From: Scyliorhinus canicula
Lineage: Eukaryota
DNA: 64,000 nt
NCBI RefSeq assembly: GCF_902713615.1
Contig: NC_052158.1
Coordinates: 40,043,729-40,107,728 of the forward strand
Direction: 5' to 3'
Positions 33,400-60,161 of this stretch are shown here, piece by piece. Made by a program: the position numbers and the translations under genes. The notes below the pieces were generated by a model that ran no database searches, was not told where the DNA came from, and saw only the letters and a list, made by a program, of their open reading frames with translations. Each line of letters begins with the position of its first letter. Position 1 is the stretch's first letter.

Positions 33400-33808
33400 A
33401 CAAGTCAAACACTGATAATTATTTATTGACTGGAAACCACAATTATCAGTTATCACAGAGAAACATTGATGATATAAATAATTACAGACTATTTTCCATA
33501 AATATATTTTAGCTCTAAAATGTATAAAAAGTTAATGAAAGAACAGGTTACATATGACATCACATAAAGTGTAAAATAGTCCAGTTCCATCAATATAAAA
33601 TGTGGCTCTCTGAGTTTCGACTGTGAGAGGCGTCACGTTGCTGATACTGGATGGAAAGCCTACTTCAGAAAGTCTCACTTGAAGAATCAGGATCCCAACC
33701 TGGTGTCTCTGGGATCCATTGTTCAATCAGTGGAAACACATTCCCAGGAAAAATTGATCTCAATCATCAAAGAACTGAGTGTAAACAATGAGCTGTAATT
33801 CTGTGTGT
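33400..33808 (-). other. Probable terminal 3'UTR exon of the MHC class I gene
   Basis: Minus acceptor CCTTCCATATCTCCGCAG at 33809 and minus AATAAA at 33422-33427. The 3' end is approximate. Confidence 0.55.
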
Positions 33809-33959
33809 CTGCGGAGATATGGAAGGATGGATAATGATGTCCAGGTTCAGACTAGAACACGCCAATCCCGTTATTCATCAATGAAACCCCGGGAATGTCC
33901 TGCAGTGGAGCCCAGTAAACCCACGAGGTAAGGAATGGAGAGAAACAAGACAATCGGTT

Positions 33960-34623
33960 CAGGGTCAGGAGGGAGTGAAATTAGTCTGACAGGTTTAACA
34001 GTGTCTGGGAGAGTGAGACAGGGTCAGGCGGGAGTGAAATTAGTCTGACAGGTTTAACAGTGTCTGGGAGGGTGAGACAGGGTCAGGAGGGAGTGAAATT
34101 AGTCTGACAGGTTTAACAGTGTCTGGGAGGGTGAGACAGGGTCAGGAGGGAGTGAAATTAGTCTGACAGGTTTTAACAGTGTCTGGGAGGGTGAGACAGG
34201 GTCAGGAGGGAGTGAAATTAGTCTGACAGGTTTAACAGTGTCTGGGAGAGTGAGACAGGGGCAGGAGGGAGTGAAATTAGTCTGACAGGTTTAACAATGT
34301 CTGGGAGAGTGAGACAGGGTCAGGAGGGAGTGAAATTAGTCTGATAGGTTTAACAGTGTCTGGGAGAGTGAGACAGGGTCAGGAGGGAGTGAAATTAGTC
34401 TGACAGGTTTAACAGTGTCTGGGAGAGTGAGACAGGGTCAGGAGGGAGTGAAATTAGTCTGACAGGTTTAACAGTGTCTGGGAGAGTGAGACAGGGTCAG
34501 GAAGGGAGTGAAATTAGTCTGACAGGTTTTAACAGTGTCTGGGAGGGTGAGACAGGGTCAGGAGGGAGTGAAATTAGTCTGACAGGTTTAACAGTGTCTG
34601 GGAGAGTGAGACAGGGTCAGGAG
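33960..34623. repeat. 59-60 bp minisatellite, about 11 copies, in the last MHC intron
   Basis: Unit GGGTCAGGAGGGAGTGAAATTAGTCTGACAGGTTTAACAGTGTCTGGGAGAGTGAGACA. Confidence 0.95.
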
Positions 34624-34668
34624 GAAAGCGATGTCCATGGGAAATAAAGTAAAATTTCACTTACTGAA

Positions 34669-34700
34669 TCATGAAGGTTCTGGAACAGGGACATCAGAAG
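34669..34700 (-). CDS. MHC class I last coding exon (TSDVPVPEPS*), exon 34665-34700
   Basis: Acceptor TTTTATTTCCTCAG, donor GTAAGT, phase 1, in frame with the upstream exon, stop at 34669-34671. Confidence 0.7.
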
Positions 34701-34770
34701 CTGAGGAAATAAAAACAAAATGTAAGAAATGGAATAAAATATCAAAATTGAGAGTGAGATTTTCTATGGG

Positions 34771-35300
34771 TGCGATTCAACTAAATGGGGTCAAAGTCCC
34801 TCAGTGAGTGTGTTTAGCCGTGTGTTTCCCAGCGTTCACATCGCTGAGAAACACGCGGCCAATCAACATTACTCACATTGAAAAAGGTGCCCCAGTGGGA
34901 ACGGGTGGGTGAGGCTGCAGGTCGCCCCGCTTCCTGCACTGAGGAGCTACACTTCCCACATCTCCTCAGTATAGCAAAAGATCAGGACCACATTTAAAAA
35001 TGTTGTCCCGAGCTCCGAGGCCCCCAGAGTAACCCCCAAACTCCACATTCCCCCCCCCCCCCTCCAGCCTGAACGCAGTGTGGAGAGTTCTCCGCCCTCC
35101 CCCCGCACCCTACAACACTCACGCAGGTACCCCCAGCCCGATCACGTGCGTGCATAAAATGCCAGCTTGGCACCTTGGACTGCCAAACCGGGAACACCCC
35201 TGCCAGCTGGCAGTGCCACCCAGGCACCTTGGCAGTGCCAGGCTGGCACCTGCAGTACCAGGCCACCACCTTGTCCAAAGGGAATGCAGCTGGGCGTCTC
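34771..35300. mobile_element. Harbinger-like MITE fragment
   Basis: Starts GGGTGCGATTCAACTAAATGG; related to the element at 60296-61120. Confidence 0.55.
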
Positions 35301-35302
35301 TG

Positions 35303-35630
35303 AGCCCCTTGGAGGGTGAGGGAGTGGAGGGTGAGAGAGTGGAGGGTGAGGGAGTGGAGGGTGAGGGAGTGGAGGGTGAGAGAGTGGAGGGTGAGGGAGT
35401 GGTGAGAGAGTGGAGGGTGAGGGAGTGGAGGGTGAGGGAGTGGAGGGTGAGGGAGTGGAGGGTGAGGGAGTGGAGGGTGAGGGAGTGGAGGGTGAGGGAT
35501 TGGAGGGTGAGGGATTGGAGGGTGAGGGAGTGGAGAATGCAGGAGTGGAGGGTGAGGGAGTGGAGGGTGAGGGAGTGGAGGGTGAGGGAGTGGAGGGTGA
35601 GAGAGTGGAGAATGCAGGAGTGGAGGGCGA
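35303..35630. repeat. 15-bp G-rich minisatellite (GAGGGTGAGGGAGTG)n
   Basis: Direct inspection. Confidence 0.95.
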
Positions 35631-35748
35631 GGCTTTGGTGGGTCTCAGTTACCCCTGTGTAACCCTGACTTATTCCGAGGAAAAAGTAATTTGACTATTT
35701 TCAATCCCGTCTATTTGCTTCCCAACAATCTGTCCCTCAGTCACTTAC

Positions 35749-35781
35749 TGTGAGCTGTTGTGTAGATCACACTCGGTGAAT
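35749..35781 (-). CDS. MHC class I 33-nt cytoplasmic exon (DSPSVIYTTAH)
   Basis: Acceptor TTTTACTTCTCCAG, donor GTAAGT, phase 1-1, in frame with the TM exon. Confidence 0.75.
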
Positions 35782-35928
35782 CTGGAGAAGTAAAATAAAT
35801 GTCAGTTAGAATGGGGAATAATCCATTATCAGAGAGTGAGAACATAACAAGTGTGAGGGAATGGAGATTGTGTGAGAAATACTCATTCCCACACTCCCCT
35901 CCATCCTTACACTTTATGGGGATCCGGT

Positions 35929-36600
35929 AAACAGAACATGGAACAATACAGCACAGAACAGGCCCTTCGGCCCATAATGTTGTGCCGAACCTTTGTTCTA
36001 GATTAATCATAGATTATCAGAGAATTTACTGTGCAGAAGGAGGCCATTCGGCCCATCGAATCTGCACCGGCTCTTGGAAAGAGCACCCTACCCAAGGTCA
36101 ACACCTGCACCCTATCCCCATAACCCAGTAACCCCACCCAACACTAAGGGCAATTTTGGACACTGAGGGCAATTTATCATGGCCAATCCACCTCACCCGC
36201 ACATCTTTGGACTGTGGGAGGAAACCGGAGCACCCGGAGGAAACCCACGCACACACGGGGAGGATGTGCAGACTCCGCACAGACAGTGACCCAAGCCGGA
36301 ATCGAACCTGGGACCCTGGAGCTGTGAAGCAATTGTGCTATCCACAATGCTACCGTGCTGCCCTTAAGAACAAATTAATCTACACTCCATCATTCTACCG
36401 TAATCCATGTACCTATCCAATAGACGCTTGAAGGTCCCTAATGTTTCTGACTCAGCTACTCCCACAGGCAGTGCATTCCATGCCCTCAACGAGAACAAAG
36501 AAAATTACAGCACAGGAACAGGCCCTTCAGCCCTTCCAGCCTGCGCTGATCCAGATCCTTTATGTAAACCTGTCGCCTATTTTCCAAGGATCTACTTCCC
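35929..36600 (-). mobile_element. Cluster of HE1-like SINE and CR1 tail fragments
   Basis: SINE body about 36010-36365, tails near 35930 and 36500. Confidence 0.8.
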
Positions 36601-36609
36601 TCTTTTCCC

Positions 36610-39600
36610 TTTGTTGCCCGTGCCACGTGATAGCGAGGCTAGGAATAGGGAGAGAGTGCAGTTGAACACGTGGCTGCAGGAATGGTGTAGGAGGGAGGGC
36701 TTCAGGTATTTGGATAATTGGAGCGCATTCTGGGGAAGGTGGGACCTGTACAAGCAGGACGGGTTGCATCTGAACCAGAGGGGCACCAATATCCTGGGAG
36801 GGAGGTTTTCTAGTACTCTTCGGGAGGGTTTAAGCTAATTTAGCAGGGGAATGGGAACCGGATTTGTAGTCCAGCAACTAAGGAAGCCGATATTCAGGAC
36901 GCCAAAGGGTGTAGTGACGCAGTGGGGAAGGTAACAATGACAAAGGAGAGTACTTGCAGGCAAGGAGATTGGTTGAAGTGTGTGTACTTCAATGCAAGAA
37001 GCATCAGGAATAAGGAGGGTGAACTTAAGGCATGGATCGGTACTTGGGACTACGATGTGGTGGCCATCACGGAAACTTGGATAGAAGAGGGGCAGAAATG
37101 GTTGTTGGAGGTCCCTGGTTATAGATGTTTCAATAAGATTAGAACATAGAACATAGAACAGTACAGCACAGAACAGGCCCTTCGGCCCTCAATGTTGTGC
37201 CGAGCCATGATCACCCTACTCAAACCCACGTATCCACCCTATACCCGTAACCCAACAACCCCCCCCCTTAACCTTACTTTTATTAGGACACTACGGGCAA
37301 TTTAGCATGGCCAATCCACCTAACCCGCACATCTTTGGACTGTGGAAGGAAACCGGAGCACCCGGAGGAAACCCACGCACACAGGGGGAGGACGTGCAGA
37401 CTCCACACAGACAGTGACCCAGCCGGGAATCGAACCTGGGACCCTGGAGCTGTGAAGCATTTATGCTAACCACCATGCTACCCTGCTGCCCCCTAGGGAG
37501 GATGGTAAAAGAGGTGAGGGGGGGTGGCATTGTTAATTAGAGATAGTATAACAGCTGCAGAAAGGCAGTTCGAGGAGGATCTGCCTACTGAGGTAGTATG
37601 GGTTGAAGTCAGAAATAGGAAAGGAGCAGTCACCTTGTTAGGAGTTTTCTATAGGCCCCCCAATAGCAGCAGAGATGTGGAGGAACAGATTGGGAAACAG
37701 ATTTTGGAAAGGTGCAGAAGTCACAGGGTAGCAGTCATGGGTGACTTCAACTTCCCAAACATTGAGTGGAAACTCTTTAGATCAAATAGTTTAGATGAGG
37801 TAGTGTTTGTGCAGTGTGTCCAGGAAGCTTTTCTAACACAGTATGTAGATTGTCCGACCAGAAGTGAGGCCATATTGGATTTGGTACTTGGTAATGAACA
37901 AGGCAGGTGATAGATTTGTTAGTGGGGGATCATTTTGGAGGTAGTGACCACAATTCTGTGACTTTCACTTTAGTAATGGAGAGGGATAGGTGCGTGCAAC
38001 AGGGCAAGGTTTACAAGTGGGGGAAGGGTAAATACAATGCTTTCAGACAAGAATTGAAGTGCATAAGTTGGGAACATAGGCTGTCAGGGAAGGACACAAG
38101 TGAAATGTGGAACTTGTTCAAGGAACAGGTACTGCGTGTCTTTGATATGTATGTCCCTGTCAGGCAGGGAAGAGATGGTCGAGTGAGGGAACCATGGTTG
38201 ACAAGAGAGGTTGAATGTCTTGTTAAGTGGAAGAAGGAGACTTATGTAAGGCTGAGGAAACAAGGTTCAGACAGGGCGCTGGAGGGATACAAGATAGCCA
38301 GGAGGGAACTGAAGAAAGGGATTAGGAGAGCTAAGAGAGGGCATGAAAAATTTTTGGCGGGTAGGATCAAGGAAAACCCCAAGGCCTTTAACACGTATGT
38401 GAGAAATATGAGAATGACTAGAGCGAGGGTAGGTCCGATTAAGGACAGTAGCGGGAGATTGTGTAGTAAGTATGAAGAGATAGGAGAGGTCTTGAACGAG
38501 TATTTTTCTTCAGTATTTACAACGACAGGGGCCATATTTTTGGAGAGGACAGTGTAGTACAGACTGGTAAGCTCGAGGAGATACTTGCTAGGAAGGAAGA
38601 TGTTTTGGGCGTTTTGAAAAACTTGAGGATAGACAAGTCCCCCGGGCCTGACGGGATATATCCAAGGATTCTATGGGAAGCAAGAAATGAAATTGCAGAG
38701 CTGTTGGCAATGATCTTTTCGTCATCACTGTCAACAGGGGTGGTACCAGGTGATTGGAGAGTGGCGAATATCATGCCCCTGTTCAAAAAAGGGAATAGGG
38801 ATAACCCTGGGAATTACAGGCCAGTTAGTCTTACTTCGGTGGTAGGCAAAGTAATGGAAAGGGTACTGAGGGATAGGATTTCTGAGCACCTGGAAAGACA
38901 CTGCTTGATTAAGGATAGTCAGCATGGATTTGTGAGGGGTATGTCTTGCCTCACAAGTCTTATTGAATTCTTTGAGGAGGTGACCAAACATGTGGATGAA
39001 GGTAAAGCAGTGGATGTAGTGTACATGGATTTTAATAAGGCATTTGATAAGGTTCCCATGGTAGGCTTATGCAGAAAGTAAGGAGGCATGGGATAGTGGG
39101 AAATTTGGCCAGTTGGATAACGACTGGCTAACCAATAGAAGTCAGAGAGTGGTGGTGAATGGCAAATATTCAACCTGGATCCCAGTTACCAGTGGCGTAC
39201 CGGAGGGATCAGTTCTGGGACCTCTGCTGTTTGTAATTTTCATTAATAACTTGGATGAGGGAGTTGAACGGTGGGCCAGTAAATTTACAGACGATACGAA
39301 GATTGGTGGAGTTGTGGATAGTGAGGAGGGCTGTTGTCGGCTGCAGAGAGACATGGATAGGATGCAGAGCTGGGCTGAGAAGTGGCAGATGGCGATTAAC
39401 CCTGACAAGTGTGAGGTCGTCCATTTTGGAAGGATAAATATGAGTGCGGAATACAGGGTTAACGGTAGGGTTCTTGGCAATGTGGAGGAGCAGAGAGATC
39501 TTGGGGTCCAGGTTCATAGATCTTTGAAAGTTGCCACTCAAGTGGCTAGAGCTGTGAAGAAGGCCTATGGTGTGCTAGCGTTCATTAGCAGAGGGATTGA

Positions 39601-39990
39601 ATTTAAGAGCCGTGAGGTGATGATGCAGTTGTACAAAACCTTGGTAATGCCACATTTGGAATACTGTGTGCAGTCCTAGTTGCCTCATTTTAGGAAGGAT
39701 GTGGAAGCTTTGGAAAAGATGTGATAGCACTGGAAAGGGGTAGAGGAGAATTACCGGGATGTTGCCTGGAATGGAAAGTAGGTCTTACGAGGAAAGGTTG
39801 AGGGTGCTCGGCCTTTTCTCATTAGAACGGAGAAGGATGAGGGGCGACTTGATAGAGGTTTATAAGATGATCGGGGAATAGATAGAGTAGACAGTCAGAG
39901 ACTTTTTCCCCGGGTGGAACAAACCATTACAAGGGGACATAAATTTAAGGTGAATGGTGGAAGATATAGGGGGGATGACAGAGGTAGGTT
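36610..39990 (+). mobile_element. 5'-truncated CR1 LINE (ORF1 esterase end plus disrupted APE-RT ORF2)
   Basis: ORF1 end (LNTWLQEWCRREGFRYLDNW..DGLHLN); APE YFNARSIRNK, VAITETW, GDFNFP, SDHN; RT KSPGPDGIYP, QHGF, DFNKAFDKVP, GVP.GSVLGP, KFTDDTK. Multiple frameshifts. Confidence 0.95.
37141..37493 (-). mobile_element. HE1-like SINE inserted in CR1 ORF2
   Basis: Interrupts AATAAGATTAG|GGAG with a short TAG duplication. Confidence 0.9.
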
Positions 39991-40009
39991 CTTTACCCAG
40001 AGAGTAGCC

Positions 40010-42560
40010 GTGTTATGTTCCTCGACCAGTGTTATGCTCCTCGTGCTCAATGTGGGAGTTCAGGGACGCGGCCGATGCCCCTGACCCCTTCATGTGCGGG
40101 AAGTGTGTCCAGCTGCAGCTCCTGTTAGACCGCATGGTGGCTCTGGAGCTGCGGATGGACTCACTTTGGAGCATCCGCGATGCTGAGGAGGTCGTGGATA
40201 GCACGCTCAGTGAGTTGGTCACACCGCAGATTAGGATTGGTGACAGAGACAGGTAATGGGTGACTAAAAGGCAGAGAAAGAGCAGGAAGGCAGTGCAGGT
40301 GTCCCCTGCGGTCATCTCCCTGAAAACAGGTATACCGTTTTGGATACTGTTGGGGGAGATGACTCACCAGGGGAAGGCAGTAGTAGCCAGGCTCATGGCA
40401 CCGTGGCTGGCTCTGCTGCACAGAAGGGCGGGAAAAAGACTGGCAGGGCTATAGTCATAGGGGATTCAATTGTAAGGGGCGTAGACAGGCATTTCTGTGG
40501 TCGGAAACGTGACTCCCGAATGGTATGTTGCCTCCCGGGTGCACGGGTCAGAGATGTCTCAGATCGGCTGCAGGGAATACTGAAGGGGGAGGGTGAACAG
40601 CCACCTGTCGTGGTGCATATAGGCACCAACGATATAGGTAAAAAACAGGATGAGGTCTTGCAATCAGAATTTAGCGAGTTAAAAAGTAGGACATCAAAGG
40701 TAGTAATCTCAGGATTGCTGCCAGTGCCACGAGCCAGTCAGAGTAGAAATTCAAGAATAGTCAGAATGAATACGTGGCTTGAGAGATGGTGCAGGAGGGA
40801 GGGGTCCAGGTTTTTGGGACATTGGAACCGGTTCTGGGGCGGTGGGACCATTACAAATCGGATAGTCTACACCTGGGCAGGACTGGAACCAATGTCCGAG
40901 GAGGTGCTTTTGCTAACACTGTTGGGGAGGTTTTAAACTAATGTGGCAGGGGGATGCTAACCAGATTAGGAAGTTAGAGGTCAGTAAAGAGGCAGCAACT
41001 AAAGCCAGTAAGGTGTTAGATAATAAACTTAATGTGACTAAGGGGACAAGTATACAGGGAAGAGATGATGAACGCAAAGGTACAGGTGGTCTGAGGTGCA
41101 TTTGTTTTAATGCAAGAAGTATAGCAGGTAAAGTAGATGAACTTAGGGCTTGGATTAGTACCTGGGAATATGATGTTATTGGTATTACTGAGACTTGGTT
41201 GAGGGAAGGGCAAGACTGGCAACTAAATATCCCAGGGTATAGATGCTTCAGGAGGGATAGGGAGGGAGGTAAAAGGGGTGAAGGAGTTGCATTACTGGTC
41301 AGAGATAATATCACAGCTGTGATTAAGGAGGGCACGATGGAGGATTCGAGCACTGAGGCAATATGGGTAGAGCTAAGAAATAGGAAGGGTGCAGTAACAT
41401 TGTTGGGAATTTACTACAGGCCTCCCAAAAGCGAGTGTGAAGTAAAGGTACAAATATGTAGACAGATGATAGAAAAATGTAGGAGCAACAGTGTGGTTGT
41501 GATGGGAGATTTTAACTTCCCCAACATTGAATGGGACTCATGTAGTGTTGGAGGCGTAGATGGAGCAGAATTTGTAAGGAGCATCCAGGAGAGCTTTTTC
41601 AAGCAGTATGTAAATAGTCCAACTCAGGAAGGGGCCATACAGGACCTGGTATTGGGGAATGATCCCAGCCAGGTGGTTGAAGTTTCCATCGGTGATTACT
41701 TTGGGAATAGCGACCACAATTCCGTAAGTTTTAGAATACTCATGGACAAAGACGAGAGTGGTCCTAAAGGAAGATTGCTAAATTGGGGAAATGCCAAGTA
41801 TAACAAAATTTGGCAGAAGCTAGGGAATGTGGATTGGGAGCAACTGTTTAAGGGTAAATCCACATTTGAAATGTGGGAGTCTTTTAAGGAAAGAGTGCAG
41901 GACAGACGTGTCCCTGTGAAAATGAGGGATAGAAATGGCAAGATTAGGGAACCATGGATGACGGGTGGAATTGTGAGACTAGCTAAGATGAAAAAGGAAG
42001 CACACATAAGATCGAGGCGACTTAAAACTGATGAAGCTTTAGAGGAATATCGGGAAAGTAGGACAAATCTCAAACGCGCAGTAAAGAGGGCTAAAAGGGG
42101 TCATGAAATATCTTTGGCGAACAGGGTTAAGGAAAATCCCAAAGCCTTTTATTCGTATATAAGGAGCAAGAGGGTAACGAGAGAAAGGATTGGCCCACTC
42201 AAAGACAAAAGAGGGAATTTATGCGTGGAGTCAGAAGAAATGGGTGAGATTCTTAATGAGTACTTTGCATCGGTATTCACCAAGGAGAGGGACATGACGG
42301 ATGTTGAGGCTATGGATGGATGTTTAAATACACTAGGTCAAGTCGGCATAAGGAAAGGGGACGTTTTGGGTATTCTAAAAGGCATTAAGGTGGACAAGTC
42401 CCCAGGACCGGATGGGATCTATCCCAGGTTACTGAGGGAAGCGAGGGTCGAATAGCTGGGGCCTTAACAGATATCTTTGCAGCATCCTTGAGCACGGGTG
42501 AGGTCCCTGAGGACTGGAGAATTGCTAGTGTTGTCCCTTTGTTTAAGAAGGGTAGCAGGG
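40010..42560 (+). mobile_element. Second CR1 LINE, 3'-truncated: ORF1 zinc finger and SGNH esterase, ORF2 APE (40941-42455)
   Basis: CSSCSMWE..CGKC, IVIGDSIVRG, CCLPGARVRDV, HIGTND; CFNARS, GITETW, GDFNFP, SDHN, KSPGPDGIYP. Confidence 0.93.
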
Positions 42561-43237: not shown

Positions 43238-44775
43238 CAGTGTCCTGTACTCCCAGTACTGGGGATTCCCCCACACTCACTCTGTCCCCTCGGTTCTACA
43301 TTCCCCTCTCTCTCCCCTCTCAGTGTCCTGTACTCCCAGTACTGGGGATTCCCCCACACTCACTCTGTCCCCTCAGTTCTATATTCCCCTCTCTCTCCCC
43401 TCTCAGTGTCCTGTACTCCCAGTACTGGGAGATCCCCCCACACTCACTCTGTCCCCTTAGTTCTACATTCCCCTCTCTCTCCCCTCTCAGTGTCCTGTCC
43501 TCCCAGTACTGGGGATTCCCCCCACACTCACTCTGTCCCCTCAGTTCTACATTCCCCTCTCTCTCTCTCTCTCCCCTCTCAGTGTCCTGTACTCCCAGTA
43601 CTGGGGATTCCCCCAAATCACTCTGTCCCCTTAGTTCTACATTCCCCCTCTCTCTCCCCTCTCAGTGTCCTGTACTACCAGTACTGGGGATCCCTCCACA
43701 CTCACTCTGTCCCCTCAGTTCTACATTCCCCTCTCTCTCTCCCCTCTCAGTGTCCTGTCACTCCCAGTACTAGGGATTCCCCCACACTCACTCTGTCCCC
43801 TCAGTTCTACATTCCCCTCTCTCTCTCCCCTCTCAGTGTCCTGTACTCCCAGTACTGGGGATTCCCCCCACACTCACTCTGTCCCCTCAGTTCTACATTC
43901 CCCTCTCTCTCTCCCCTCTCAGTGTCCTGTACTCCCAGTACTGGGGATTCCCCACATTCACTCTGTCCCCTCAGTTCTACATTCCCCTCTCTCTCCCCTC
44001 TCAGTGTCCTGTACTCCCAGTACTGGGGATTCCCCACATTCACTCTGTCCCCTCAGTTCTACATTCCCCTCTCTCTCCCCTCTCAGTGTACTGTACTCCC
44101 AGTATGGGGATTCCCCCACACTCACTGTCCCCTCAGTTCTACATTCCCCCCCTCTCTCTCTCTCTCCCCTCTCAATGTCCTGTACTCCCAGTACTGGGGA
44201 TTCCCCACATTCACTCTGTCCCCTCAGTTCTCCATTCCCCTCTCTCTCCCCTCTCAGTGTCCTGTACTCCCAGTACTGGGGATTCCCCCACACTCACTCT
44301 GTCCCCTCAGTTCTACATTCCCCTCTCTCTCTCCCCTCTCTGTGTACCTGTACTCCCATAGGGGATTCCCCCACATTCACTCGTCCCCTCAGTTCTACAT
44401 TCCCTCTCCCGTACTCACGGGGATCCCCCACCTCTCCCCTCAGTTCTACATTCCCTCTCTCTCCCCTCTCCCTTATCAGTACTGGGATCCCCACACTCAC
44501 TCTGTCCCCTCATTCTACATTCCCCTCTCTTCCCTCTCAGTGCCTGTACTCCCAGTACTGGGATTCCCCCACACTCACTCTGTCCCCTCAGTTCTACATT
44601 CCCTCTCTCTCGTCCCCTCTCCAGTGTCCTGTACTCCCAGTACTGGGGATCCCCCACACACTCTGTCCCCCAGTTCTACATTCCCTCCTCTCTCCCCTCT
44701 CAGTGTCCTGTACTCCCAGTACTGGGGATTCCCCCACACTCACTCTGTCCCACAGTTCTACATTCCCCTCTCTCT
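43238..44775. repeat. 82-83 bp minisatellite, about 19 copies, abutting the TM exon donor
   Basis: The unit contains the palindrome CCCAGTACTGGG and (CT)n. Copies become deletion-rich toward 44770. Confidence 0.93.
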
Positions 44776-44784
44776 TAATCTTAC

Positions 44785-44904
44785 CTCTCCGTTTTCTTTT
44801 CCAGATGATGATTCCGATTGAACCACATATAACAATCAGTGCTGGGATCATTGATCCAATTATAATTCCAAGATGGAAGTGTCCCCCATTGTTTTCCCGG
44901 AATT
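44785..44904 (-). CDS. MHC class I transmembrane exon
   Basis: EFRENNGGHFHLGIIIGSMIPALIVICGSIGIIIWKRKRR, acceptor CTGTTTCAG, donor GTAAGA, 120 nt, phase 1-1. Confidence 0.9.
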
Positions 44905-45479
44905 CTGAAACAGATGTGAATAATATGAGGATTGTCTCTCTGCTCCCGGATCCATTCCCAGTTCTTAATTGGGGACAATTTGAACTGAAGCAGCCCATTG
45001 GGAATTGATGGGATTGGTGGGAACGTTGGTTGTACACTCGCCCGATTTTACTCTCCAGTGAAGTCACTAAAGATTCCCATTGATGGGGGTGTCAAAGCTG
45101 TGTTTTCCCAATCCCGTGGGTTACCTTCCCGGCCAGTTCAGTTCTATTTCTCCCCAATGTCTCTGTGTCCTGTCCTTGCTCAATCTCCAGGGTTACATTG
45201 TACGGCCCAGGATGCAGCATCACTGATGGGTTTCACATCAAACTTCAAAGGGATGAGGAATAAACTGACCACAGGAAACTGGGCTGAGCTGATAATGAGG
45301 AAAACAACAGATAAACAGAGCAAACGCTTCAAAAGAAGCACTAGGTACAATCCAACACAGAACTTAATCCTAACCGACTGCAGTGAAGCCACCATGGACA
45401 ACACATGGAATTGTGAGAGAATCCAACTCAAAGAAAAGATTCACAAATGGCCAGAGATTGAGTTCCAGACATTGGGACG

Positions 45480-46080
45480 AGAATCAGCTGATCAAAGAGA
45501 GACAGGATGGATCTGTGATGGGGGCTCATGTCTGACTAATCACATTGAATTTGATCAGGATCTCACTGACATGGTGGATAAGGGCTTCCAGAAGGTCATT
45601 GATAAAGTTCCACACAAGATTCTTGACAATAATCAGAATGGAATTGGAGGTAATCTTTGACACGGGGTCAGAATTGCTTTGGAGTTATGAAACAGGGAAT
45701 GGGGTAAAAGGAATGTGCTCCCATTGGCAGGATGGGATCAGTTGTATTCCCCGAGGGATCTGTACTGGGCCCTCAGCTTTTCACCATCTGTATTAATGAC
45801 TTGGATGAAGGGACAGAGAATTGTACATTCCAGTTTACTGATGACACTAAGTTAGGAGATTCAGTGTAAGAATATGGACAAAATTAAATAAGTGAATTCC
45901 ATCTGCCACAGTTTTTCCCAATGTGGGAAGTGTGGGATCATCCACATTAAATCTGGGAAAAACAAATCAAAATAATTTCACAATATTGAGAGACTAGGAG
46001 CTGTAAAACAAACAAAGAGATTTGAATAACCCTGAACACAAATCACTAAACGCTTGCTCCCTGTCTCAGAAATCTGAATG
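45480..46080 (+). mobile_element. Old CR1 RT fragments
   Basis: GSCLTNHIEF, FQKVIDKVPH and ..FTDDTK-like decayed motifs. Confidence 0.65.
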
Positions 46081-46150
46081 GTGGAACAGAGTCAATGGGC
46101 TGAATGGCGTCTTCCTGTTACACACACACATATCCAGTCCAGTTCCTTAC

Positions 46151-46429
46151 CCCACTGATGGAGCTTGGGCTCTGCCAGGCTGCTGTGTTCAATTTGACAG
46201 GAGTATTGATCCTCATCCCCAGCATTTATTTCAATCTCTTTCTGGATCTGATGGCTCCCATCGTGGTTCGGTCGAAGCCCCGAGGATTGTGTCTCAGACA
46301 TTACCTCTCCATTCCTTAGCCAGGTCACCTCGATGTCTACAGGATAAAACCCAGTAACCAGGCAGGAGAGAGTGAGCGGCTTGTACTGACTATTGGGCTC
46401 GCTTTTAGAGATGAAGACTTCAGGCTGAT
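46151..46429 (-). CDS. MHC class I alpha3 (Ig C1) exon
   Basis: LSCLVTGFYPVDIEVTWLRNG..PNHDGSHQ..YSCQIEHSSL, 279 nt, AG/GT, phase 1-1. Confidence 0.97.
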
Positions 46430-46545
46430 CTGTAATGGGAAAGGGTGAAAACACAAACAATAGACAGACACTGAATGGAATGGGAGAACGGTTTGATAGG
46501 TCAGTGAAGATAGATCAGAACATGGATCAAAACTCAAATCAGTAC

Positions 46546-46821
46546 CTTTCCGTCCAAAATATTCCTTTCCAGCTTGTAAATAATTCTTTAAACGTTCAAC
46601 AAGTTCAATTTCTAGGTGCCATTTCCAAAACTTATTCCAGGATTCATCGTTATCCCAATCCTCTTTAATCTTCACTGCATTGGGATTGGTTGCGACCCAT
46701 CTCATTCTGTCTGGATCTAAACTAACATAGTCCTTTCCATCAAATCTTTGATTCATCCACCGCTTCATGGTGCCATCTTCAGAGATCTCAACAGATTTTA
46801 TCCATTGCATAATGTGAATTC
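46546..46821 (-). CDS. MHC class I alpha2 exon (non-classical, no cysteines)
   Basis: GIHIMQW..DG..FDGKDYVSLD..W..KEDWD..LE..ERLKNYL, 276 nt, AG/GT, phase 1-1. Confidence 0.95.
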
Positions 46822-48404
46822 CTGTCAGTGAACAGACATAATCAATAATCAATCATTTCCTGGTAATTCGAGATCTCCTTTCAGGTGGGAATATATTTAC
46901 CTAATTACTGTTTGAATAAATGGGATGGGATCGGGTGAGATCTGGAGGTGGGATTTATGGAGCCGACAAGAGTGGGCGACACGGTGGGGGGGGGGGGTGT
47001 GACTTCATTGGGTGGGATGTGAAAATTAAATTTCCCCCCCTGGGTTTGAGATGCTGAGGTCATGTCAGTGGCGGGCTTGTGGTGTGTCGAGCAGGATTGT
47101 GACGTGTTATTGCGCGAATACATTTACACCCCATGAATATTCATCAATGAGAACAGTTTGTATAAGGTCCTATCTTCATAATAATGTCAATGGCGCACGG
47201 GAATCATGGGCCACCCAGTTAATGGCCATTTAACAATGATGGGCACCAGTCAGTTTTGTGTTTAAGGTCAGTTGTCCTCGCTTAACTCTGGAGCTCAATG
47301 GAGGGAAGCAGGAGAATGGCCACTTGAGCCTCAGGACCGGGAAGGTAGGTTTGCCGGGTGGGATCGAGATCATTGAGTAGCGTAAAGAGTTACCGGGGGA
47401 GGATGGAGGGTGGGGTTGGGCCATGGAGCAGTGAAGTCGGAATGTCCTGGCTTCCTGGGTGCAGTGTGGGATGGGGGAGAGGGGGGGGGGGGGGGGGTGA
47501 CCAAGGGAAGGTAATAAGAGGCTACAGCAAACCAACTGTGTGCCTATCTCAGGAAGCTGGATGGAAAAGTTGTTCCAGGACTTTGGGACATTTCAGTTTT
47601 CTCTGCTGTAGAGTAAAGGGTTGACATCAGAAGAACCCGAGCCTGATGGAACGACATATGTCACGACACAAGTCTCAGTGTTAATTACACAAATTCAAAA
47701 TCCAGCCTGTGTTTCTACGGGTGTGATTCAGTGGCCGCGTTGCGCTCAAGTGAGAGTGAGGCCATTGAATAGCGGGAGAGACGACAAACGAGAACTGCGC
47801 TGGGCACTAACCCGTTCGTGATATAACCGGCCCGCTCCCGGAGGTGAAATCAGGATCATGCTGCAGCGTGGCGAGAAACCAACGATCACCACTTCAGGCC
47901 AATCGCCATCCAATTAATGAGAGGCACCCCCTATACAACGGCCCCCTGTGATCCAATAGCCTCCCCAGCAAGTGGTCACACGGGCGGCGACTAGTGCTCC
48001 TGTTTAAAAATGTGAACCTGGCGTAAAGGCTGCTGCGGGGACAGAGGAGGTGAGTAGGTATCTTCATTCACAGGCAAAGATCCCAGGGGCACTGGGGTCA
48101 TTGCCTGTGCTCAGAGAGGGGTGGAGGGGCAACAGGGGGTGGGGAACAGCCTTGGTTGGGGTGTGCCGCCCCGGCGGTGGGGGTTCCAGAATAAGGTGGT
48201 ATGTGTGATGGCAACCGCACGTGGGTCCGTCATGTCAACGCCTGGATCGTGTATACCAGTGCTGGGGGCAGCCCAACGCTCTGCCAGTCTGTCCCACTGT
48301 CACCCATAATTCCAACAGACCGCAGAAGCCTCCGGCCGTGCGGCTGAAGGCTATTGCGAACTGGGAATTGGCCATAGTAGTTAACTGAGCAATTCACACA
48401 TCCC

Positions 48405-50035
48405 AAGTGGATCCCCGTGGGTAGGCGTGCCATGCAGCATGTGGGAGGATCCCCGTGGGTAGGCGTGCCATGCAGCATGTGGGAGGATCCCCATGGGTAG
48501 GCGTGCCATGCAGCATGTGGGAGGATTCCCGTGGGTAGGCGTGCCATGCAGCATGTGGGAGGATCCCCGTGGGTAGGCGTGCCATGCAGCATGTGGGAGG
48601 ATCCCCATGGGTAGGCGTGCCATGCAGCATGTGGGAGGATTCCCGTGGGTAGGCGTGCCATGCAGCATGAGGGAGGATCCCCGTGGGTAGGCGTGCCATG
48701 CAGCATGTGGGAGGATGCCGTGGGTAGGCGTGCCATGCAGCATGTGGGAGGATCCCCATGGGTAGGCGTGCCATGCAGCATGTGGAGGGATACCCATGGG
48801 TAGGCGTGCCATGCAGCATGTGGGAGGATCCCCGTGGGTAGGCATGCCATGCAGCATGTGGGAGGATCCCCCGTGGGTAGGCGTGCCATGCAGCATGTGG
48901 GAGGATCCCCCGTGGGTAGGCGTGCCATGCATGTGGGAGGATCCCCGTGGGTAGGCGTGCCATGCAGCATGAGGGAGGATCCCCGTGGGTAGGCGTGCCA
49001 TGCAGCATGTGGGAGGATCCCCGTGGGTAGGCGTGCCATGCAGCATGTGGGAGGATCCCCGTGGGTAGGCGTGCCATGCAGCATGTGGGAGGATTCCCGT
49101 GGGTAGGCGTGCCATGCAGCATGTGGGAGGATCCCCATGGGTAGGCGTGCCATGCAGCATGTGGGAGGATTCCTGTGGGTAGGCGTGCCATGCAGCATGT
49201 GGAGGGATACCCATGGGTAGGCGTGCCATGCAGCATGTGGGAGGATCCCCGTGGGTAGGCATGCCATGCAGCATGTGGGAGGATGCCGTGGGTAGGCGTG
49301 CCATGCAGCATGAGGGAGGGTCCCGTGGTAGGCGTGCCATGCAGCATGTGGGAGGATCCCCGTGGGTAGGCGTGCCATGCAGCATGTGGGAGGATCCCCG
49401 TGGGTAGGCGTGCCATGCAGCATGTGGGAGGATCCCCGTGGGTAGGCGTGCCATGCAGCATGTGGGAGGATACCCGTGGGTAGGCGTGCCATGCAGCATG
49501 TGGGAGGATCCCTGTGGGTAGGCGTGCCATGCAGCATGTGGGAGGATCCCCGTGGGTAGGCGTGCCATGCAGCATGTGGGAGGATTCCCGTGGGTAGGCG
49601 TGCCATGCAGCATGTGGGAGGATCCCCGTGGGTAGGCGTGCCATGCAGCATGTGGGAGGATCCCCGTGGGTAGGCGTGCCATGCAGCATGAGGGAGGATC
49701 CCCGTGGGTAGGCGTGCCATGCAGCATGTGGGAGGATGCCGTGGGTAGGCGTGCCATGCAGCATGAGGGAGGATCCCCGTGGGTAGGCGTGCCATGCAGC
49801 ATGAAGGAGGATCCCCGTGGGTAGGCGTGCCATGCAGCATGTGGGAGGATCCCCGTGGGTAGGCGTGCCATGCAGCATGTGGGAGGATTCCTGTGGGTAG
49901 GCGTGCCATGCAGCATGTGGGAGGATTCCTGTGGGTAGGCGTGCCATGCAGCATGTGGGAGGATCCCGTGGGTAGGCGTGCCATGCAGCATGTGGGAGGA
50001 TCCCTGTGGGTAGGCGTGCCATGCAGCATGTGGGA
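48405..50035. repeat. 38-bp minisatellite, about 43 copies
   Basis: Unit GGGAGGATCCCCGTGGGTAGGCGTGCCATGCAGCATGT. Confidence 0.97.
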
Positions 50036-50384
50036 GTTACTGCTGAGCCTCCCAATCAGACTGTGAAGCCTAAACACTGTGCATCAACCCTGCATGAAGC
50101 AACACAAGGGACACAGTGGCCAACTTCCCAATACCCAGGGAATGGGTCACAGCTCCGGGGACATGTCCGCAGCTGGAGGGTGGGTGGGGAAACTAGCGGC
50201 CGGTCCAGGTAATGCTACGTACGGGTATCTGGGTCTGGTGAGCAGAGGCCTCTGCTGTGGCTGGATGTGCCGAGCTTGGGAGGGAGGGTGGGGGCAGGGA
50301 GCAATGGTGGCTGCAGTGTCCTGGGGTGGAAGACATCGCAGTTTTACAGTCTCACATCCTCTCCCCTTTCTTAACAGATATCAA

Positions 50385-51988: not shown

Positions 51989-52056
<68 letters not shown>

Positions 52057-54056: not shown

Positions 54057-54559
54057 AATGTCTCCCATTATCTACTCTCCAGGGAGCCTTCTTCATAAAC
54101 AAAATCCCATTCGCCCTGGATGACCAAGGGTCGTCCTGACTCGAAACGTTAGCTTCCTTCTCTCTCCACAGATGTTGTCAGACCTGCTGAGTTTGTCCAG
54201 TATTTTCTGTTTTTGTCCTATTAGCCCTACTTTGAGAAGCAGTAGTCATGGCTGGGATGAATTACGATCTTACTTTTCTGAGACGGTAATTATCCCTGAT
54301 GTAGCCACACAGCCAGGCTGTTTCTCAAACCAGGAGTTTAAAAAACATGAATATAGCAGTCATGCACACACTAACCCTGGCTTTAACCAATACTGCACCA
54401 AATATTTATAATACAATGCACACTATATCTGAAATATCTACACCCATCACAAGTCTAAACGTGGGGCCTGGCTGTGCATGCTGCAATGAAATCGGAGTGG
54501 GTTAGGGTCCAGAATGTGATTTTTAATACATGCCATGGTACAAACATTGGTGATAAATC

Positions 54560-57177: not shown

Positions 57178-57335
57178 GGGCTGGATTCTCCAGTTCTGTA
57201 GCCGCGGGATTCTCTCTTCCCGCCGCTTCTCAATGGGATTTCCCATTGAAGCCACACCACGCTGCTGGGAAACCCACGGACAGGGGTGTGTTGTCAGCGG
57301 GAACAGAGTATCCCAACAGCTGGAGAATTCCAGCC
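57178..57335. mobile_element. Harbinger-type MITE, TSD ATT
   Basis: Termini GGGCTGGATTCTCC and GGAGAATTCCAGCC, ATT on both sides. Confidence 0.75.
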
Positions 57336-58059
57336 ATTGTGTTTAGTTTCAGTGAGATGATGTAGTTAATGGGAGGAATCAAAGTGGACTTGGATCTGAA
57401 ATGGGTGTTGTTTGAATGGGAATAAAGGTAACAATTAGGATTGTTTCATTATATTGTTAAGCATTGTTTAACTGGTAATTGAAAGCTATTGGGTAGGATT
57501 CTCTGTCCCCGTCAGCAGTGGAATCCTCCGCCCCAGCAGTCGCCCAATGGGGTTTTCCATTGTGGCAACTCCCACGCCGTTGGGAAAATCATGGGCGTGA
57601 GTGTGCTGCCGGCAAAGCGGATAATCCCGCTGACAAAGAATCCCACCGCTTGTATTTACGATGTTCAAGTAAGTAACACTGTTAGTAAGAAAGTTTGGTT
57701 CAAATTGCCCTATCCCTATTGGTGCATCAAATCACTCCTGGAGCGAAGGGAATTGGCCATGTTTAATTGCCCCTGAGTGTCACAAAGATGTATAGGTTAG
57801 GTGGAGTTATGGGGCTAAGGGGATAGGGTGGGGGAGTGGGCCTGGGTGGGTTGCTCTTTCAGAGGGTCGATGCAGACTCGATGGGCCACATGGCCTCCTT
57901 CTGCACTGCAGGAATCCTATGGTTTTAATTTCAGGTGACAATTGATGTGCGTCATGTTGCTGTTGGTGCTGCTGCAAGAATCCAAAGGCCTGTTGCTTAT
58001 TTTTCTTGAAAACTAAATACTCATTAAAATAAATATTTGACAATCGAGAAGGAGATTCT

Positions 58060-58582
58060 GGCGGGATTCTCCAATTGCCGACGCTGAAACCGCGTTCTCT
58101 GGCCAGAGAATCTGTTCTGACGGCGAGATCAGAGCCGGCGCTGTTTCTGCCATACTCTGCCCCCTCAGAAACGGCCTAGTCGAAGACTACGCTGCACGCC
58201 CAATGGACGGCTCAGGACGTCACCTGAGGCCTTCCCCGATGCTTCGAGTCCCCAAAGGCGTCACTCGCATGTTGTCTCACCGTTCGGGGACCTCACGTGG
58301 TGGCTGCGGACTGAGTCCAGCGCTGCCACACTCGCTGGGGTGGGGGCGTGTCCAAGGGATCACTATCTGGCAGGCCGATACCGTACGCAGCCGGCACCAT
58401 GTTGGACGGCTACGGACCCGGCCATTCTGCGGCCGTATCTGCAGGTAAACCGGGGGCTTTACACTACGGGGCTGCTAGCCCCCCTCCTGACAGAGGGTCG
58501 GTGTGGGGGCAGCGCCGACTTTCTGGTCATAAGACCAGACGGTTCCTGCGGACATAGCCGCAGCTTTGGAGAATCCAGTCCT
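58060..58582. mobile_element. Harbinger-type MITE
   Basis: Termini GGCGGGATTCTCC and GGAGAATCCAGTCC. Confidence 0.7.
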
Positions 58583-58982
58583 TCAGTTACCAACAATTCA
58601 TTGGACATAATTTACAGACCACAATCCGTTCCAGTTTCTGGAAATGTTTCAGGGTCAAAATGCAAGACTGTTTAGATGGAGTTTATTGTTACAACCATTT
58701 AATATTAATAAATATTTTACATGCAGCAAGAAGAGAAAACGTGATTGCTGATGCTTTATCACTAATCCGAGATGTGAAGGTGAAAACGAAAGACTGAAAT
58801 GGATTGTAATTTGTTTAAATTTGCATGCTTAAAGGAAATATTATATGTATCTTATGAAGTATTGCTCGTGTTTAGTAACGAGTAATGTTTAGAGTTGAAA
58901 GGTTTGGAAAATGAAGTCAACTTTTAATAATGGTTCTTTTCGTAAGGGGAGGTGTGATGAATGTAGGAATTTCAGATATATT

Positions 58983-59592
58983 GGGCTGGATTCTCCGTTC
59001 TGGAGAGAATCCACGGCAGCGTGAAAAGAGTGGTGTTTTACGACAGGAGAACTGGTTTTGCTGGGGGCCAGCAGGGCGGCAGCGTAGAGCACCTGGTTCT
59101 TGCTGTCGATGTGGCCTGGAGAATTGTCGGGTTCGTGGTCACGCATGCGCACGGCGGCGGCCTGCAGCGGCCGTGCTTCATGGCGGATGCTGCTCGCAGA
59201 CCTGTCCCGAAAAATAGTGGCCCCCTTCGGGCGGCTTGCGTGCCCCAGACCACCCCACCGGTGACCCCAGCCCTGAATATATCCATCCCTGCCCGCGGAT
59301 CAGCCCTCCCCGACTGTGGCGATGCTGGACTGAGTCCACAGTTCCCGCCGAGTGAGACCACAACCAACCCACGCCGTCAGGATCTCGGCCGGTTTGGGAC
59401 GGAGCATCGGGGGGTGGGCCTCAGCCAACGTACAGAGGCCCTGGATATGGCCTGTGGCATACTCTGCGACTATGCTGCTTTTCAGTGGGGGAGCATCGCG
59501 AAAGCGACGCCACCCCGGCTTTGGCATCATCGTGGATTCCCCACCCTGTCGCCGAACGCAATTTTGGCGTCAGGGATCAGGGAATCCAGCCC
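58983..59592. mobile_element. Harbinger-type MITE in the 3' LTR, TSD ATT
   Basis: Termini GGGCTGGATTCTCC and GGAATCCAGCCC, ATT on both sides. Confidence 0.82.
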
Positions 59593-59900
59593 ATTGTATT
59601 CTATGTTTTTGGTGCAGTAAGTGTTAAAAGCCTGGATTAGTGTGTGACTGCTGCCGTCAATATATCTGCTTCTTTGCAACTGTTGGGGTCGCCACTATCT
59701 GTTTTCTGACAGTTAAACAACCCTGTATCCATGCACTATATTACTTCATATCCATGTGCTCTAATTCTGCTTACTATCTTTGGGACCTAATGGGAAGCCT
59801 TTTGAAAAACCAAATACACCACATCCACTCGTCCGCCCTTATCTGCTCTTGTTAATAAAGTGTGACAATCAACACAAGGTTTCCATATGCACGACCTTAC

Positions 59901-60161
59901 CAGACGTCAGGTTTGTGCTCTTCATTATCGTATTCAGATTCTGCTTTGCCAGGTTTGTGTGTGTTTTTGCCTTTTCAGTCAAGTGGTCCCAGAATTCCGT
60001 TTTGAAATATTCGGCCATGAACTGCTGCCTGGGAATACACCGTTGGATATTGCTGTCATAATATCCTGTTTGGACACCATTGACGATCGCAGCACCAGTG
60101 ACCTGAGGAAAATCTTCAATGCCGAAGGTGACAGTGTATATCACCGTGAGGGAGTTCAAGT
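59901..60161 (-). CDS. MHC class I alpha1 exon
   Basis: DLNSLTVIYT..GIEDFPQ..VNGVQTGYYDS..IPRQQFMAE..EFWD..NLTSG, 261 nt, acceptor TTTCTTTACAG, donor GTAAGG, conserved N86-type sequon NLT. Confidence 0.95.

What the first reader, a model, noticed from the sequence alone, without database searches (positions are those of the whole stretch)
33400..60161. Open-frame non-classical MHC class I gene whose alpha2 domain lacks the canonical disulfide
Seen: six coding exons splice GT-AG in phase 1 into one open frame, with junction codons G, D, E, D, T. In alpha2, the positions of C101 (GCE) and C164 (xCxEWL) read SVE and ELVERL, so the domain has no Cys; alpha3 keeps both. Established: the C101-C164 bond is nearly invariant in class I and CD1 molecules and stabilises the groove. 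Inference: loss of both partner Cys with no disabling mutation suggests a functional, structurally deviant lineage. It could be a sublineage of a shark multigene non-classical family such as UEA/UCA, or an unassigned one.
Basis: partly seen in the sequence, partly recalled or inferred. Interest (0 to 1): 0.8.

Follow-up and report, generated by a model that had tools for sequence, protein, structure and literature searches.

The report
Catshark nonclassical MHC-I without alpha2 disulfide
This is a real, intact and transcribed catshark MHC class I-like gene that lacks the usual alpha2 disulfide, but the loss is shared by a whole shark-only multigene family (most likely the described UEA lineage) and the gene is already in RefSeq, so it is an ordinary member of a known group.

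Summary
On the minus strand, six GT-AG, phase-1 exons (alpha1, alpha2, alpha3, TM, cyt1, cyt2) splice into one open frame with junction codons G, D, E, D, T. [quoted passage not shown] The leader exon lies about 7-8 kb beyond the window.

Alpha2 has no Cys: C101 is V and C164 is L. Alpha3 keeps its pair. Spliced transcripts of this gene occur in contigs from three studies.

The Cys loss is not special to this gene. In 93 family proteins from 13 shark species (50-75% identical), position 101 is V/A/I/L and position 164 is highly variable. All 17 outgroup class I sequences keep both Cys. The family is a strongly supported clade, multicopy, and found only in sharks. By elimination against the held literature it is the UEA lineage (about 0.8); no UEA-labelled sequence or the 2021 UEA paper could be read.

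AlphaFold predicts a canonical class I fold with high confidence. The scan had already noted two paralogues 670 kb away with the same loss.

Within the family this gene is unusual only for D146, I143 and a free Cys at groove position 45.

The parts
59901..60161 (-). alpha1 exon (261 nt, phase 1 in and out). Encodes (D)LNSLTVIYTVTFG...NLTS(G). N86 glycosylation site NLT is kept. It has a single unpaired Cys at the position aligned to HLA M45 (codon 60039-60037).
   Evidence: AG acceptor and GT donor. Pfam MHC_I is weak here, 1.6e-4. 100% match to P0265. HLA alignment for C45.
46546..46821 (-). alpha2 exon (276 nt) with no Cys. V at C101 (46792-46790) and L at C164 (46603-46601).
   Evidence: Pfam MHC_I 5.9e-16. 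Gap-free alignments to 7edo, 6lhg and 4e0r. Family alignment. RNA contigs cover it at 0-1 mismatches (records 5, 9, 17).
46151..46429 (-). alpha3 exon (279 nt), Ig C1-set with both canonical Cys. It is nearly identical among S. canicula paralogues.
   Evidence: Pfam C1-set 1.9e-18. C219 and C274 are invariant in A1. Paralogue reads share this exon (loose ends at 46151).
44785..44904 (-). Connecting-peptide and transmembrane exon (120 nt): EFRENNGGHFHLGIIIGSMIPALIVICGSIGIIIWKRKRR. It is skipped in RefSeq isoform X2 (P0183).
   Evidence: The alpha3-TM joint 44904/46151 is seen in an X1 contig and one X20 raw read.
35749..35781 (-). Cytoplasmic exon 1 (33 nt): (D)SPSVIYTTAH.
   Evidence: The TM-cyt1 junction is shown by an X1 loose end that maps exactly to 35754-35781.
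34669..34700 (-). Cytoplasmic exon 2, coding part: (T)SDVPVPEPS plus stop TGA (34671-34669). The 3'UTR continues downstream.
33422..33427 (-). Whether the 3'UTR is contiguous or spliced was not determined.
   Evidence: Sequence read.

Best explanation
The locus is the Scyliorhinus canicula gene for RefSeq proteins XP_038672213-17. It encodes a type I membrane nonclassical MHC class I heavy chain, with a TM-less splice isoform. It belongs to a large, shark-restricted class Ib multigene family that is most probably the UEA lineage of Almeida et al. 2021. The alpha2 disulfide was lost in the common ancestor of that family. C101 became a nearly fixed Val. Its former partner at position 164 then drifted among mostly hydrophobic residues, Leu in this gene. 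Inferred: these residues pack the alpha2 helix onto the sheet in place of the S-S bond, so the canonical fold is kept. Several classical peptide-terminus anchors are gone (Y7V, Y59F, R84S, T143I, K146D, Y159H), while W147, Y171 and N86 remain. The protein therefore cannot clamp peptide termini as class Ia does. It most likely displays a non-classical, probably hydrophobic, ligand, or acts as a ligand itself for innate-like T or NK-type receptors. Shown here: gene structure, Cys loss, family-wide distribution, monophyly, transcription and splicing, predicted fold. Inferred: UEA naming, hydrophobic packing, beta2m pairing and ligand type.
For: The splice is identical to P0265 residues 19-350, with RefSeq names and accessions. 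Alignments give C101->V and C164->L. Family survey: 93 proteins 50-75% identical against 17 outgroups at 30-39%. Position 101 is V81/A3/I2/L2; the one 'C' is a mis-modelled partial protein. Position 164 is L31 F21 Y9 C9 S7 D5 G4 and others. All 17 outgroups keep both Cys. In the alpha1alpha2 tree the family is one clade (SH-aLRT 99, stem length 0.93). It is sister to a UDA-like clade containing nurse shark QGX07421 and Callorhinchus, and is separate from UAA-like sequences. On that tree position 164 changes at least 22 times against 5 at position 101, which fits loss of C101 first. Members come from 13 shark species of both superorders, and no ray or chimaera protein exceeds 45% identity. Held literature states that sharks have two expanded class Ib families: UBA, derived from UAA, and the more ancient UEA, with UDA, UFA and UGA single-copy (PMC12562908; PMC10751288). 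Spliced contigs show alpha1-alpha2 in X1, X2 and X4 (three studies), alpha2-alpha3, alpha3-TM and TM-cyt1. The S. torazame orthologue fragment is 94% identical with the same SVE and ELVERL. The AlphaFold model has mean pLDDT 85.5 with alpha1/alpha2 blocks at 89-96. Foldseek best TM-scores are to shark UGA 9ch4 (0.93), chicken BF2 and shark UAA 6lup. Anchor-residue table.
Against: No sequence labelled UEA was available, and the two J Immunol papers (PMC7002201, PMC8454915) are not held. The lineage name therefore rests on elimination and on my memory of the 2021 abstract. Whether the published description mentions the missing Cys is unverified. Beta2m association, surface expression and ligand are untested. 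The start codon lies outside the window. Alpha3 read depth is inflated by paralogues, so the expression level of this gene is unknown. Runs X1, X2 and X4 are only guessed to be RNA, although their contigs are spliced. MHC linkage of this very gene was not shown directly.
Confidence: 0.8

Rival explanations
1. The family is a shark class Ib lineage distinct from all named ones (UAA to UGA). The window gene would then be a member of an undescribed, disulfide-less lineage.
For: No hit carried a UEA label, and RefSeq names are all generic 'F10 alpha chain-like'. No nurse shark sequence of this family appeared among the hits, although UEA was described largely from nurse shark. The only nurse shark hit, P0254, lies in the sister UDA-like clade.
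Against: Held reviews list only two expanded shark Ib families. The other one, UBA, is said to derive from UAA, whereas this family is only 30-39% identical to UAA-like sequences. A family with 7-16 sequence clusters per species in eleven-plus annotated shark genomes would hardly have been missed by the genome-wide surveys of PMC10751288. The properties I recall from the 2021 abstract fit: sharks only, multigene, anchors lost.
Confidence: 0.1
2. One reading: this gene, or a small sublineage, is a structurally deviant novelty within class I because it alone lost the groove-stabilising bond.
For: The gene has a long terminal branch (0.34) and no close non-Scyliorhinus orthologue in the tree. It has rare groove residues within the family: D146 in 2 of 93 and I143 in 13 of 93.
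Against: The Cys loss is universal in the family. It is also present in the six other S. canicula family clusters surveyed and in two paralogues 670 kb away noted earlier by the scan. The predicted fold is canonical with high confidence.
Confidence: 0.07
3. It is a decaying or non-functional gene copy. Loss of the structural Cys pair would then reflect relaxed constraint, and the transcripts would be noise.
For: The family contains many truncated or odd gene models, for example P0023, P0009 and P0011. The introns are packed with LINEs and satellites. Expression appears low in the one bona fide RNA run, with 10 reads.
Against: The frame is open across all six exons with canonical splice sites. 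Splicing is correct in contigs of three studies. The S. torazame orthologue is 94% identical at the protein level. N86, W147, Y171, the alpha3 Cys pair and the C1-set core are conserved. The model confidence is high.
Confidence: 0.03

Closest known systems
Shark UEA nonclassical class I lineage (Almeida et al., J Immunol 2021; cited in PMC10751288 and PMC12562908)
   Same: Expanded multicopy family that is older than and not derived from UAA, and is detected in sharks only. It lies in the class Ib cluster together with single-copy UDA, and the sister clade in my tree is UDA-like. Most peptide N-terminus anchors are lost.
   Different: Nothing was shown to differ. Identity with UEA is inferred by elimination because no labelled sequence or paper text was accessible. 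Within the family this gene is unusual for D146 and I143.
Classical shark class Ia, UAA (e.g. Triakis scyllium O46847; structure 6lup)
   Same: Same exon-domain plan with phase-1 junctions, and the same alpha1/alpha2 platform plus C1-set alpha3 plus TM. N86, W147 and Y171 are kept. Predicted structure TM-score 0.88 to 6lup.
   Different: Only 33% identical. It lacks the C101-C164 disulfide and lacks Y7, Y59, R84, T143, K146 and Y159. It is multicopy rather than a single polymorphic locus.
Shark UDA (nurse shark QGX07421, Callorhinchus V9KZF7-like)
   Same: Sister clade in the alpha1alpha2 tree. The leader peptide is almost identical (MLLILFSISLCFSWVSP).
   Different: UDA keeps both alpha2 Cys and the HSLRYYY start, is single-copy, and also occurs in chimaeras. 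Identity is 30-35%.
Shark UGA, the CD1-like lipid binder (PDB 9ch4)
   Same: Best structural match of the model (TMt 0.93, rmsd 2.0). It is also a nonclassical shark class Ib.
   Different: 33% identity, no closer than any other class I. Reported as single or low copy (PMC12562908).
Teleost nonclassical lineages (S, P; Grimholt et al. 2015, PMC4364491)
   Same: Nonclassical, with divergent grooves and lost peptide anchors.
   Different: That paper states that S and P sequences keep the alpha2 Cys pair, which it calls 'conserved in most MHC molecules'. The shark family here does not.

Membership tests
MHC class I heavy chain superfamily | alpha1/alpha2 MHC_I platform domains | tested here: met
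   Pfam PF00129: alpha2 5.9e-16; alpha1 1.6e-4, below the cut-off on its own. Full protein against PDB class I chains, E about 1e-50. Foldseek TM-scores 0.86-0.93.
MHC class I heavy chain superfamily | Membrane-proximal Ig C1-set alpha3 domain with its Cys pair | tested here: met
   PF07654 1.9e-18. C219 and C274 are invariant in A1.
MHC class I heavy chain superfamily | One exon per domain with phase-1 junctions | tested here: met
MHC class I heavy chain superfamily | alpha2 intradomain disulfide C101-C164 (near-universal hallmark) | tested here: not met
   V and L at these positions, and no Cys anywhere in alpha2.
MHC class I heavy chain superfamily | Non-covalent association with beta2-microglobulin | not testable with these tools
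Classical class Ia (shark UAA) | Invariant residues that bind peptide termini (Y7, Y59, Y/R84, T143, K146, W147, Y159, Y171) | tested here: not met
   The window gene has V, F, S, I, D, W, H, Y at these positions, so only W147 and Y171 are kept. Nearly all outgroup sequences keep each of these residues (13-17 of 17 per position).
Shark UEA lineage | Expanded multigene family | tested here: met
   7 sequence clusters (90% identity) in S. canicula, 16 in C. punctatum, 14 in H. ocellatum, 10-11 in lamniforms.
Shark UEA lineage | Present in sharks, not detected in rays or chimaeras (recalled from the 2021 abstract) | tested here: met
   All 93 members come from 13 shark species, including Heptranchias and Pristiophorus. 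No batoid or holocephalan protein exceeds 45% identity among the candidates. The search is word-seeded, so absence is not absolute.
Shark UEA lineage | Ancient and not derived from UAA (unlike UBA); located in the cluster with UDA | tested here: met
   30-39% identity to UAA-like sequences. The clade has 99 support and a stem of 0.93, and is sister to the UDA-like clade. Physical linkage to UDA was not tested.
Shark UEA lineage | Clusters with a reference sequence named UEA | not testable with these tools
   No UEA-labelled protein was returned. The papers are not held and the supplement labels genes only as 'MHC-Ib'.
Shark UEA lineage | MHC linkage | tested here: inconclusive
   Family members sit on a single chromosome-sized record per species. 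The Carcharodon record length of 115.8 Mb fits NC_054485.1, the MHC chromosome in the PMC10751288 supplement. Coordinates of this gene could not be obtained.
Shark UFA/UGA (CD1-like) | Single or low copy; close sequence relationship to UGA structure 9ch4 | tested here: not met
   The family is multicopy. 9ch4 is 33% identical with E 5.5e-45, which is no better than chicken or human class I.

The most novel reading that the evidence does not exclude
The trait itself may be undescribed and functionally meaningful. An entire 350-My-old class I family would have replaced the groove disulfide with a fixed Val101 and a freely varying residue 164. A third of its members, including this gene, also carry a lone Cys at the B-pocket position 45. 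That Cys could act as a reactive thiol that captures ligand covalently or by redox chemistry, by analogy with MR1 Lys43, or it could drive disulfide-linked dimers as in HLA-G. With D146/I143, this gene would define a sublineage with its own ligand chemistry.
Probability: 0.1. Interest if true: 0.7.

Novelty: already known. Interest (0 to 1): 0.25.

Why it matters
The alpha2 disulfide is one of the most conserved features of MHC class I and CD1. A large, ancient, expressed family that does without it shows that the fold tolerates its loss, and it offers a natural system for asking what the bond contributes to groove stability and ligand exchange. That is a point about the shark family, which is already described in outline, and not about this locus. 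For annotation, the useful results are these. The generic RefSeq name 'F10 alpha chain-like' hides a UEA-type class Ib gene. Its exon structure and splicing are verified. The Cys loss should be read as a lineage marker, not as a sign of pseudogenisation.

Tried and rejected
1. I first mapped C101 to the Ser of 'IKSVEIS'.
2. I looked for the leader exon in 60162-64000. There is none: that stretch is unique sequence followed by a 40-bp satellite. The annotated gene span places the leader outside the window.
3. I tried to read Almeida et al. 2020 and 2021 by PMC id and DOI; neither is held. Four literature searches found no text describing UEA cysteines.
4. The supplement of PMC10751288 labels genes only as 'MHC-Ib', with no lineage names.
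5. I tried to fetch DNA of the S. torazame orthologue for dN/dS, and the chromosomal coordinates of this gene. No DNA or coordinates were returned.
6. A tblastn of the core protein against the window found no second MHC gene in it.
8. The one family 'Cys' at position 101 (P0011) is a mis-modelled partial protein with intron-like sequence, not a real exception.
9. The pseudogene reading was rejected on the open frame, correct splicing and orthologue conservation.
Full report
**Observation.**
The gene lies on the minus strand. Reading the sequence and splicing it in a script gives six exons.

| Exon | Coordinates | Length |
|---|---|---|
| alpha1 | 60161-59901 | 261 nt |
| alpha2 | 46821-46546 | 276 nt |
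| alpha3 | 46429-46151 | 279 nt |
| connecting peptide/TM | 44904-44785 | 120 nt |
| cyt1 | 35781-35749 | 33 nt |
| cyt2 | 34700-34669 | 32 nt, ends in TGA |

- Every acceptor is AG and every internal donor is GT.
- Pfam recognises alpha2 as MHC_I (5.9e-16) and alpha3 as C1-set (1.9e-18). Alpha1 matches MHC_I only weakly, at 1.6e-4.
- A tblastn of the core protein finds no second MHC gene in the window.

**The cysteines.**
- HMMER aligns the alpha2 exon to solved class I chains essentially without gaps. 'mygCelt' pairs with 'iksVeis' and 'leetCvlwl' with 'leieLverl', so C101 is Val and C164 is Leu.
- The exon has no Cys anywhere.
- Alpha3 keeps both of its Cys. They are invariant in a 67-sequence alignment.
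- My first script used the Ser column by mistake.

**Identity of the gene.**
- A whole-library HMMER search with the alpha2 exon found a set of shark proteins 55-66% identical, well above the roughly 35% of ordinary class I.
- A word-seeded search with one of them, P0005, returned about 100 RefSeq proteins from sharks. [quoted passage not shown]
- One of them, P0183 (XP_038672216/7, Scyliorhinus canicula isoform X2), is this gene without the TM exon.
- Its cluster mate P0265 (XP_038672213-15, isoform X1, 350 aa) ends with exactly my six-exon translation. The match is 100% over residues 19-350.
- The first 18 residues are the leader MFLILFSISLCFSWVSP plus the split Asp. The leader is not encoded in the window.
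- Upstream of alpha1 there is about 1.3 kb of unique sequence and then a 40-bp satellite that runs to the window end.
- The annotated gene spans 37.7 kb. That places the leader exon about 7-8 kb beyond position 64000.

**Transcription and splicing.**
Contigs of three runs from three studies, plus raw reads of one bona fide oligo-dT RNA run, were laid on 44700-46900 at 97% or better.
- *alpha1-alpha2:* contigs in X1, X2 and X4 end alpha2 at its acceptor and continue with 28-30 letters that match 59902-59931, the 3' end of alpha1, exactly.
- *alpha2-alpha3:* the joint is present in X2 and X4.
- *alpha3-TM:* the joint 44904/46151 (GT..AG on the minus strand) is in an X1 contig and one X20 read.
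- *TM-cyt1:* the same X1 contig continues from the TM exon into letters that match cyt1 (35754-35781) exactly.
- All ten X20 reads lie on the plus strand. This is the orientation expected of a stranded library for a minus-strand gene.
- Loose ends at 46151 in X2, X4 and X20 belong to paralogues' TM exons. Alpha3 depth is therefore shared among paralogues and says nothing about the level of this gene.
- A T>A difference at 46748 changes Gln to His, the residue found in S. torazame. This suggests an allele.

**The trait is family-wide.**
- BLAST against the window protein splits the collected sequences cleanly. 93 are 50-75% identical and 17 are 30-39% identical.
- In the MAFFT alignment, all 17 outgroups keep both Cys. 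They are Triakis UAA, UAA/UBA-like RefSeq proteins, nurse shark 'nonclassical' QGX07421, Callorhinchus and lungfish.
- Among the 93 family members, position 101 is V81, A3, I2, L2, with 4 gaps.
- Position 164 is L31, F21, Y9, C9, S7, D5, G4 and others.
- The single 'C' at position 101 is P0011, a partial mis-modelled protein.
- Members come from 13 species: Heterodontus, Scyliorhinus (two species), Mustelus, Carcharodon, Cetorhinus, Chiloscyllium (two species), Hemiscyllium, Stegostoma, Rhincodon, Heptranchias and Pristiophorus. Both shark superorders are represented.
- No ray or chimaera protein is closer than the outgroups.
- An alpha1alpha2 maximum-likelihood tree (97 rows, quick search) makes the family one clade. 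SH-aLRT support is 99 and the stem length is 0.93.
- The sister is a clade holding QGX07421 and Callorhinchus, which is UDA-like. UAA-like sequences lie apart.
- On that tree, position 164 needs at least 22 changes and position 101 only 5. The simplest reading is that C101 was replaced by Val once on the stem, after which its orphaned partner was free to vary.
- The window gene sits inside the clade on a long terminal branch (0.34) with no resolved orthologue outside Scyliorhinus.
- An S. torazame fragment (GCB85417.1) is 94% identical over alpha2-alpha3 and carries the same SVE and ELVERL.

**Which lineage.**
- The held literature says that sharks have two expanded class Ib families. UBA derives from UAA, and UEA is more ancient. 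UDA, UFA and UGA are single-copy. UDA and UEA share one cluster next to the adaptive MHC (PMC12562908; PMC10751288).
- The present family is expanded, far from UAA, sister to UDA-like sequences (with which it shares a near-identical leader peptide), and only 33% identical to the solved UGA chain 9ch4. By elimination it is UEA.
- My recollection of the 2021 abstract agrees: sharks only, complex multigene, anchor residues lost, three sublineages. That is memory, not a test.
- The paper and its sequences could not be accessed. I therefore cannot say whether the missing disulfide is stated there, though an alignment figure would show it.

**How it probably works.**
- AlphaFold2 with the family alignment gives mean pLDDT 85.5, with 89-96 across alpha1/alpha2 including both former Cys positions. 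The topology is the standard platform plus Ig domain.
- Foldseek's best TM-scores are to shark UGA (0.93), chicken BF2 (about 0.89) and shark UAA 6lup (0.88). The fold is predicted to be canonical.
- Inferred: Val101 on the floor strand and Leu164 on the helix replace the covalent link by hydrophobic packing.
- Of the classical termini-binding residues, the gene keeps only W147 and Y171. It has V7, F59, S84, I143, D146 and H159.
- The family consensus keeps T143, K146, W147 and Y171 but not Y7 or Y159.
- D146 (2 of 93) and I143 (13 of 93) make this gene unusual within the family.
- N86 glycosylation is conserved (88 of 93).
- The gene, like 33 of 93 members, has a lone Cys at the position aligned to HLA M45 in the B pocket. 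Its state is unknown.
- I infer a beta2m-associated surface class Ib molecule, with a soluble isoform. It would bind something other than termini-anchored peptides, or serve directly as a receptor ligand.

**Context.**
- The introns are large and filled with repeats:
  - an antisense LINE (endonuclease and RT ORFs, 36.9-42.5 kb);
  - an 83-bp minisatellite abutting the TM donor (43238-44775);
  - a 38-bp array (48409-50036);
  - a 59-bp array just 3' of the stop (33960-34624);
  - the 40-bp satellite (61677-64000).
- Earlier notes of this scan report two paralogues 670 kb away with the same double Cys loss, and a CD1-like class Ib 1.66 Mb away. Both fit a class Ib cluster.

**Verdict.**
The feature is a synapomorphy of a known, RefSeq-annotated shark multigene family, most likely UEA. 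Interest is low to moderate. The residual novelty lies in the unverified possibility that the disulfide loss, the variable position 164 and the groove Cys45 have not been described or explained.

Noticed in passing
window 60037-60039 (minus strand codon TGT): There is a lone ectodomain Cys in alpha1 at the position aligned to HLA M45 (B pocket). It is present in 33 of 93 family members from nine species, and no partner Cys exists in alpha1 or alpha2 of this gene.
   Followed up: partly
window 46748: A T>A difference appears in an X2 contig and one X20 read. It changes Gln to His in alpha2 (WMNQ to WMNH). His is the residue in the S. torazame orthologue, so this is probably an allele.
   Followed up: partly
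window 44785-44904: RefSeq isoform X2 (P0183) skips the TM exon and joins alpha3 directly to cyt1, which predicts a soluble form. Only the TM-containing junctions were seen in the reads laid here.
   Followed up: partly
window 46151-46429: The alpha3 exon is nearly identical among S. canicula paralogues (P0191, P0193, P0194, P0023, P0238), while alpha1/alpha2 differ by 25-35%. This suggests gene conversion or concerted evolution of alpha3. It also means reads on alpha3 cannot be assigned to a single gene.
   Followed up: partly
window 61677-64000 (and 61441-61637): A 40-bp satellite of at least 58 copies at 97% identity fills intron 1 and runs off the window end.
   Followed up: no
window 43238-44775; 48409-50036; 33960-34624: Three long minisatellites lie inside or next to the gene. 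An 83-bp unit ends 10 nt from the TM exon donor. A 38-bp unit with 43 copies lies in the alpha1-alpha2 intron. A 59-bp unit lies just 3' of the stop codon.
   Followed up: no
window 36900-42500 (+ strand): Two LINE copies or fragments (Exo_endo_phos endonuclease and RVT_1 ORFs) lie antisense to the gene in the TM-cyt1 intron.
   Followed up: partly
window 9400-22000 (+ strand): A GC-rich retroelement has an integrase ORF (rve, 20532-21842) and long upstream ORFs without Pfam hits.
   Followed up: no
window 23417-24844 (+ strand): A 475-aa ORF matches DUF4371 (9.4e-17). It is probably the remnant of a hAT/ZMYM-type transposase-derived element.
   Followed up: no
P0254 (QGX07421) against P0265, leader peptides: The UDA-like nurse shark protein and this family share an almost identical leader (MLLILFSISLCFSWVSP), although their ectodomains are only about 33% identical. 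This hints at exon-1 sharing or conversion within the class Ib cluster.
   Followed up: no
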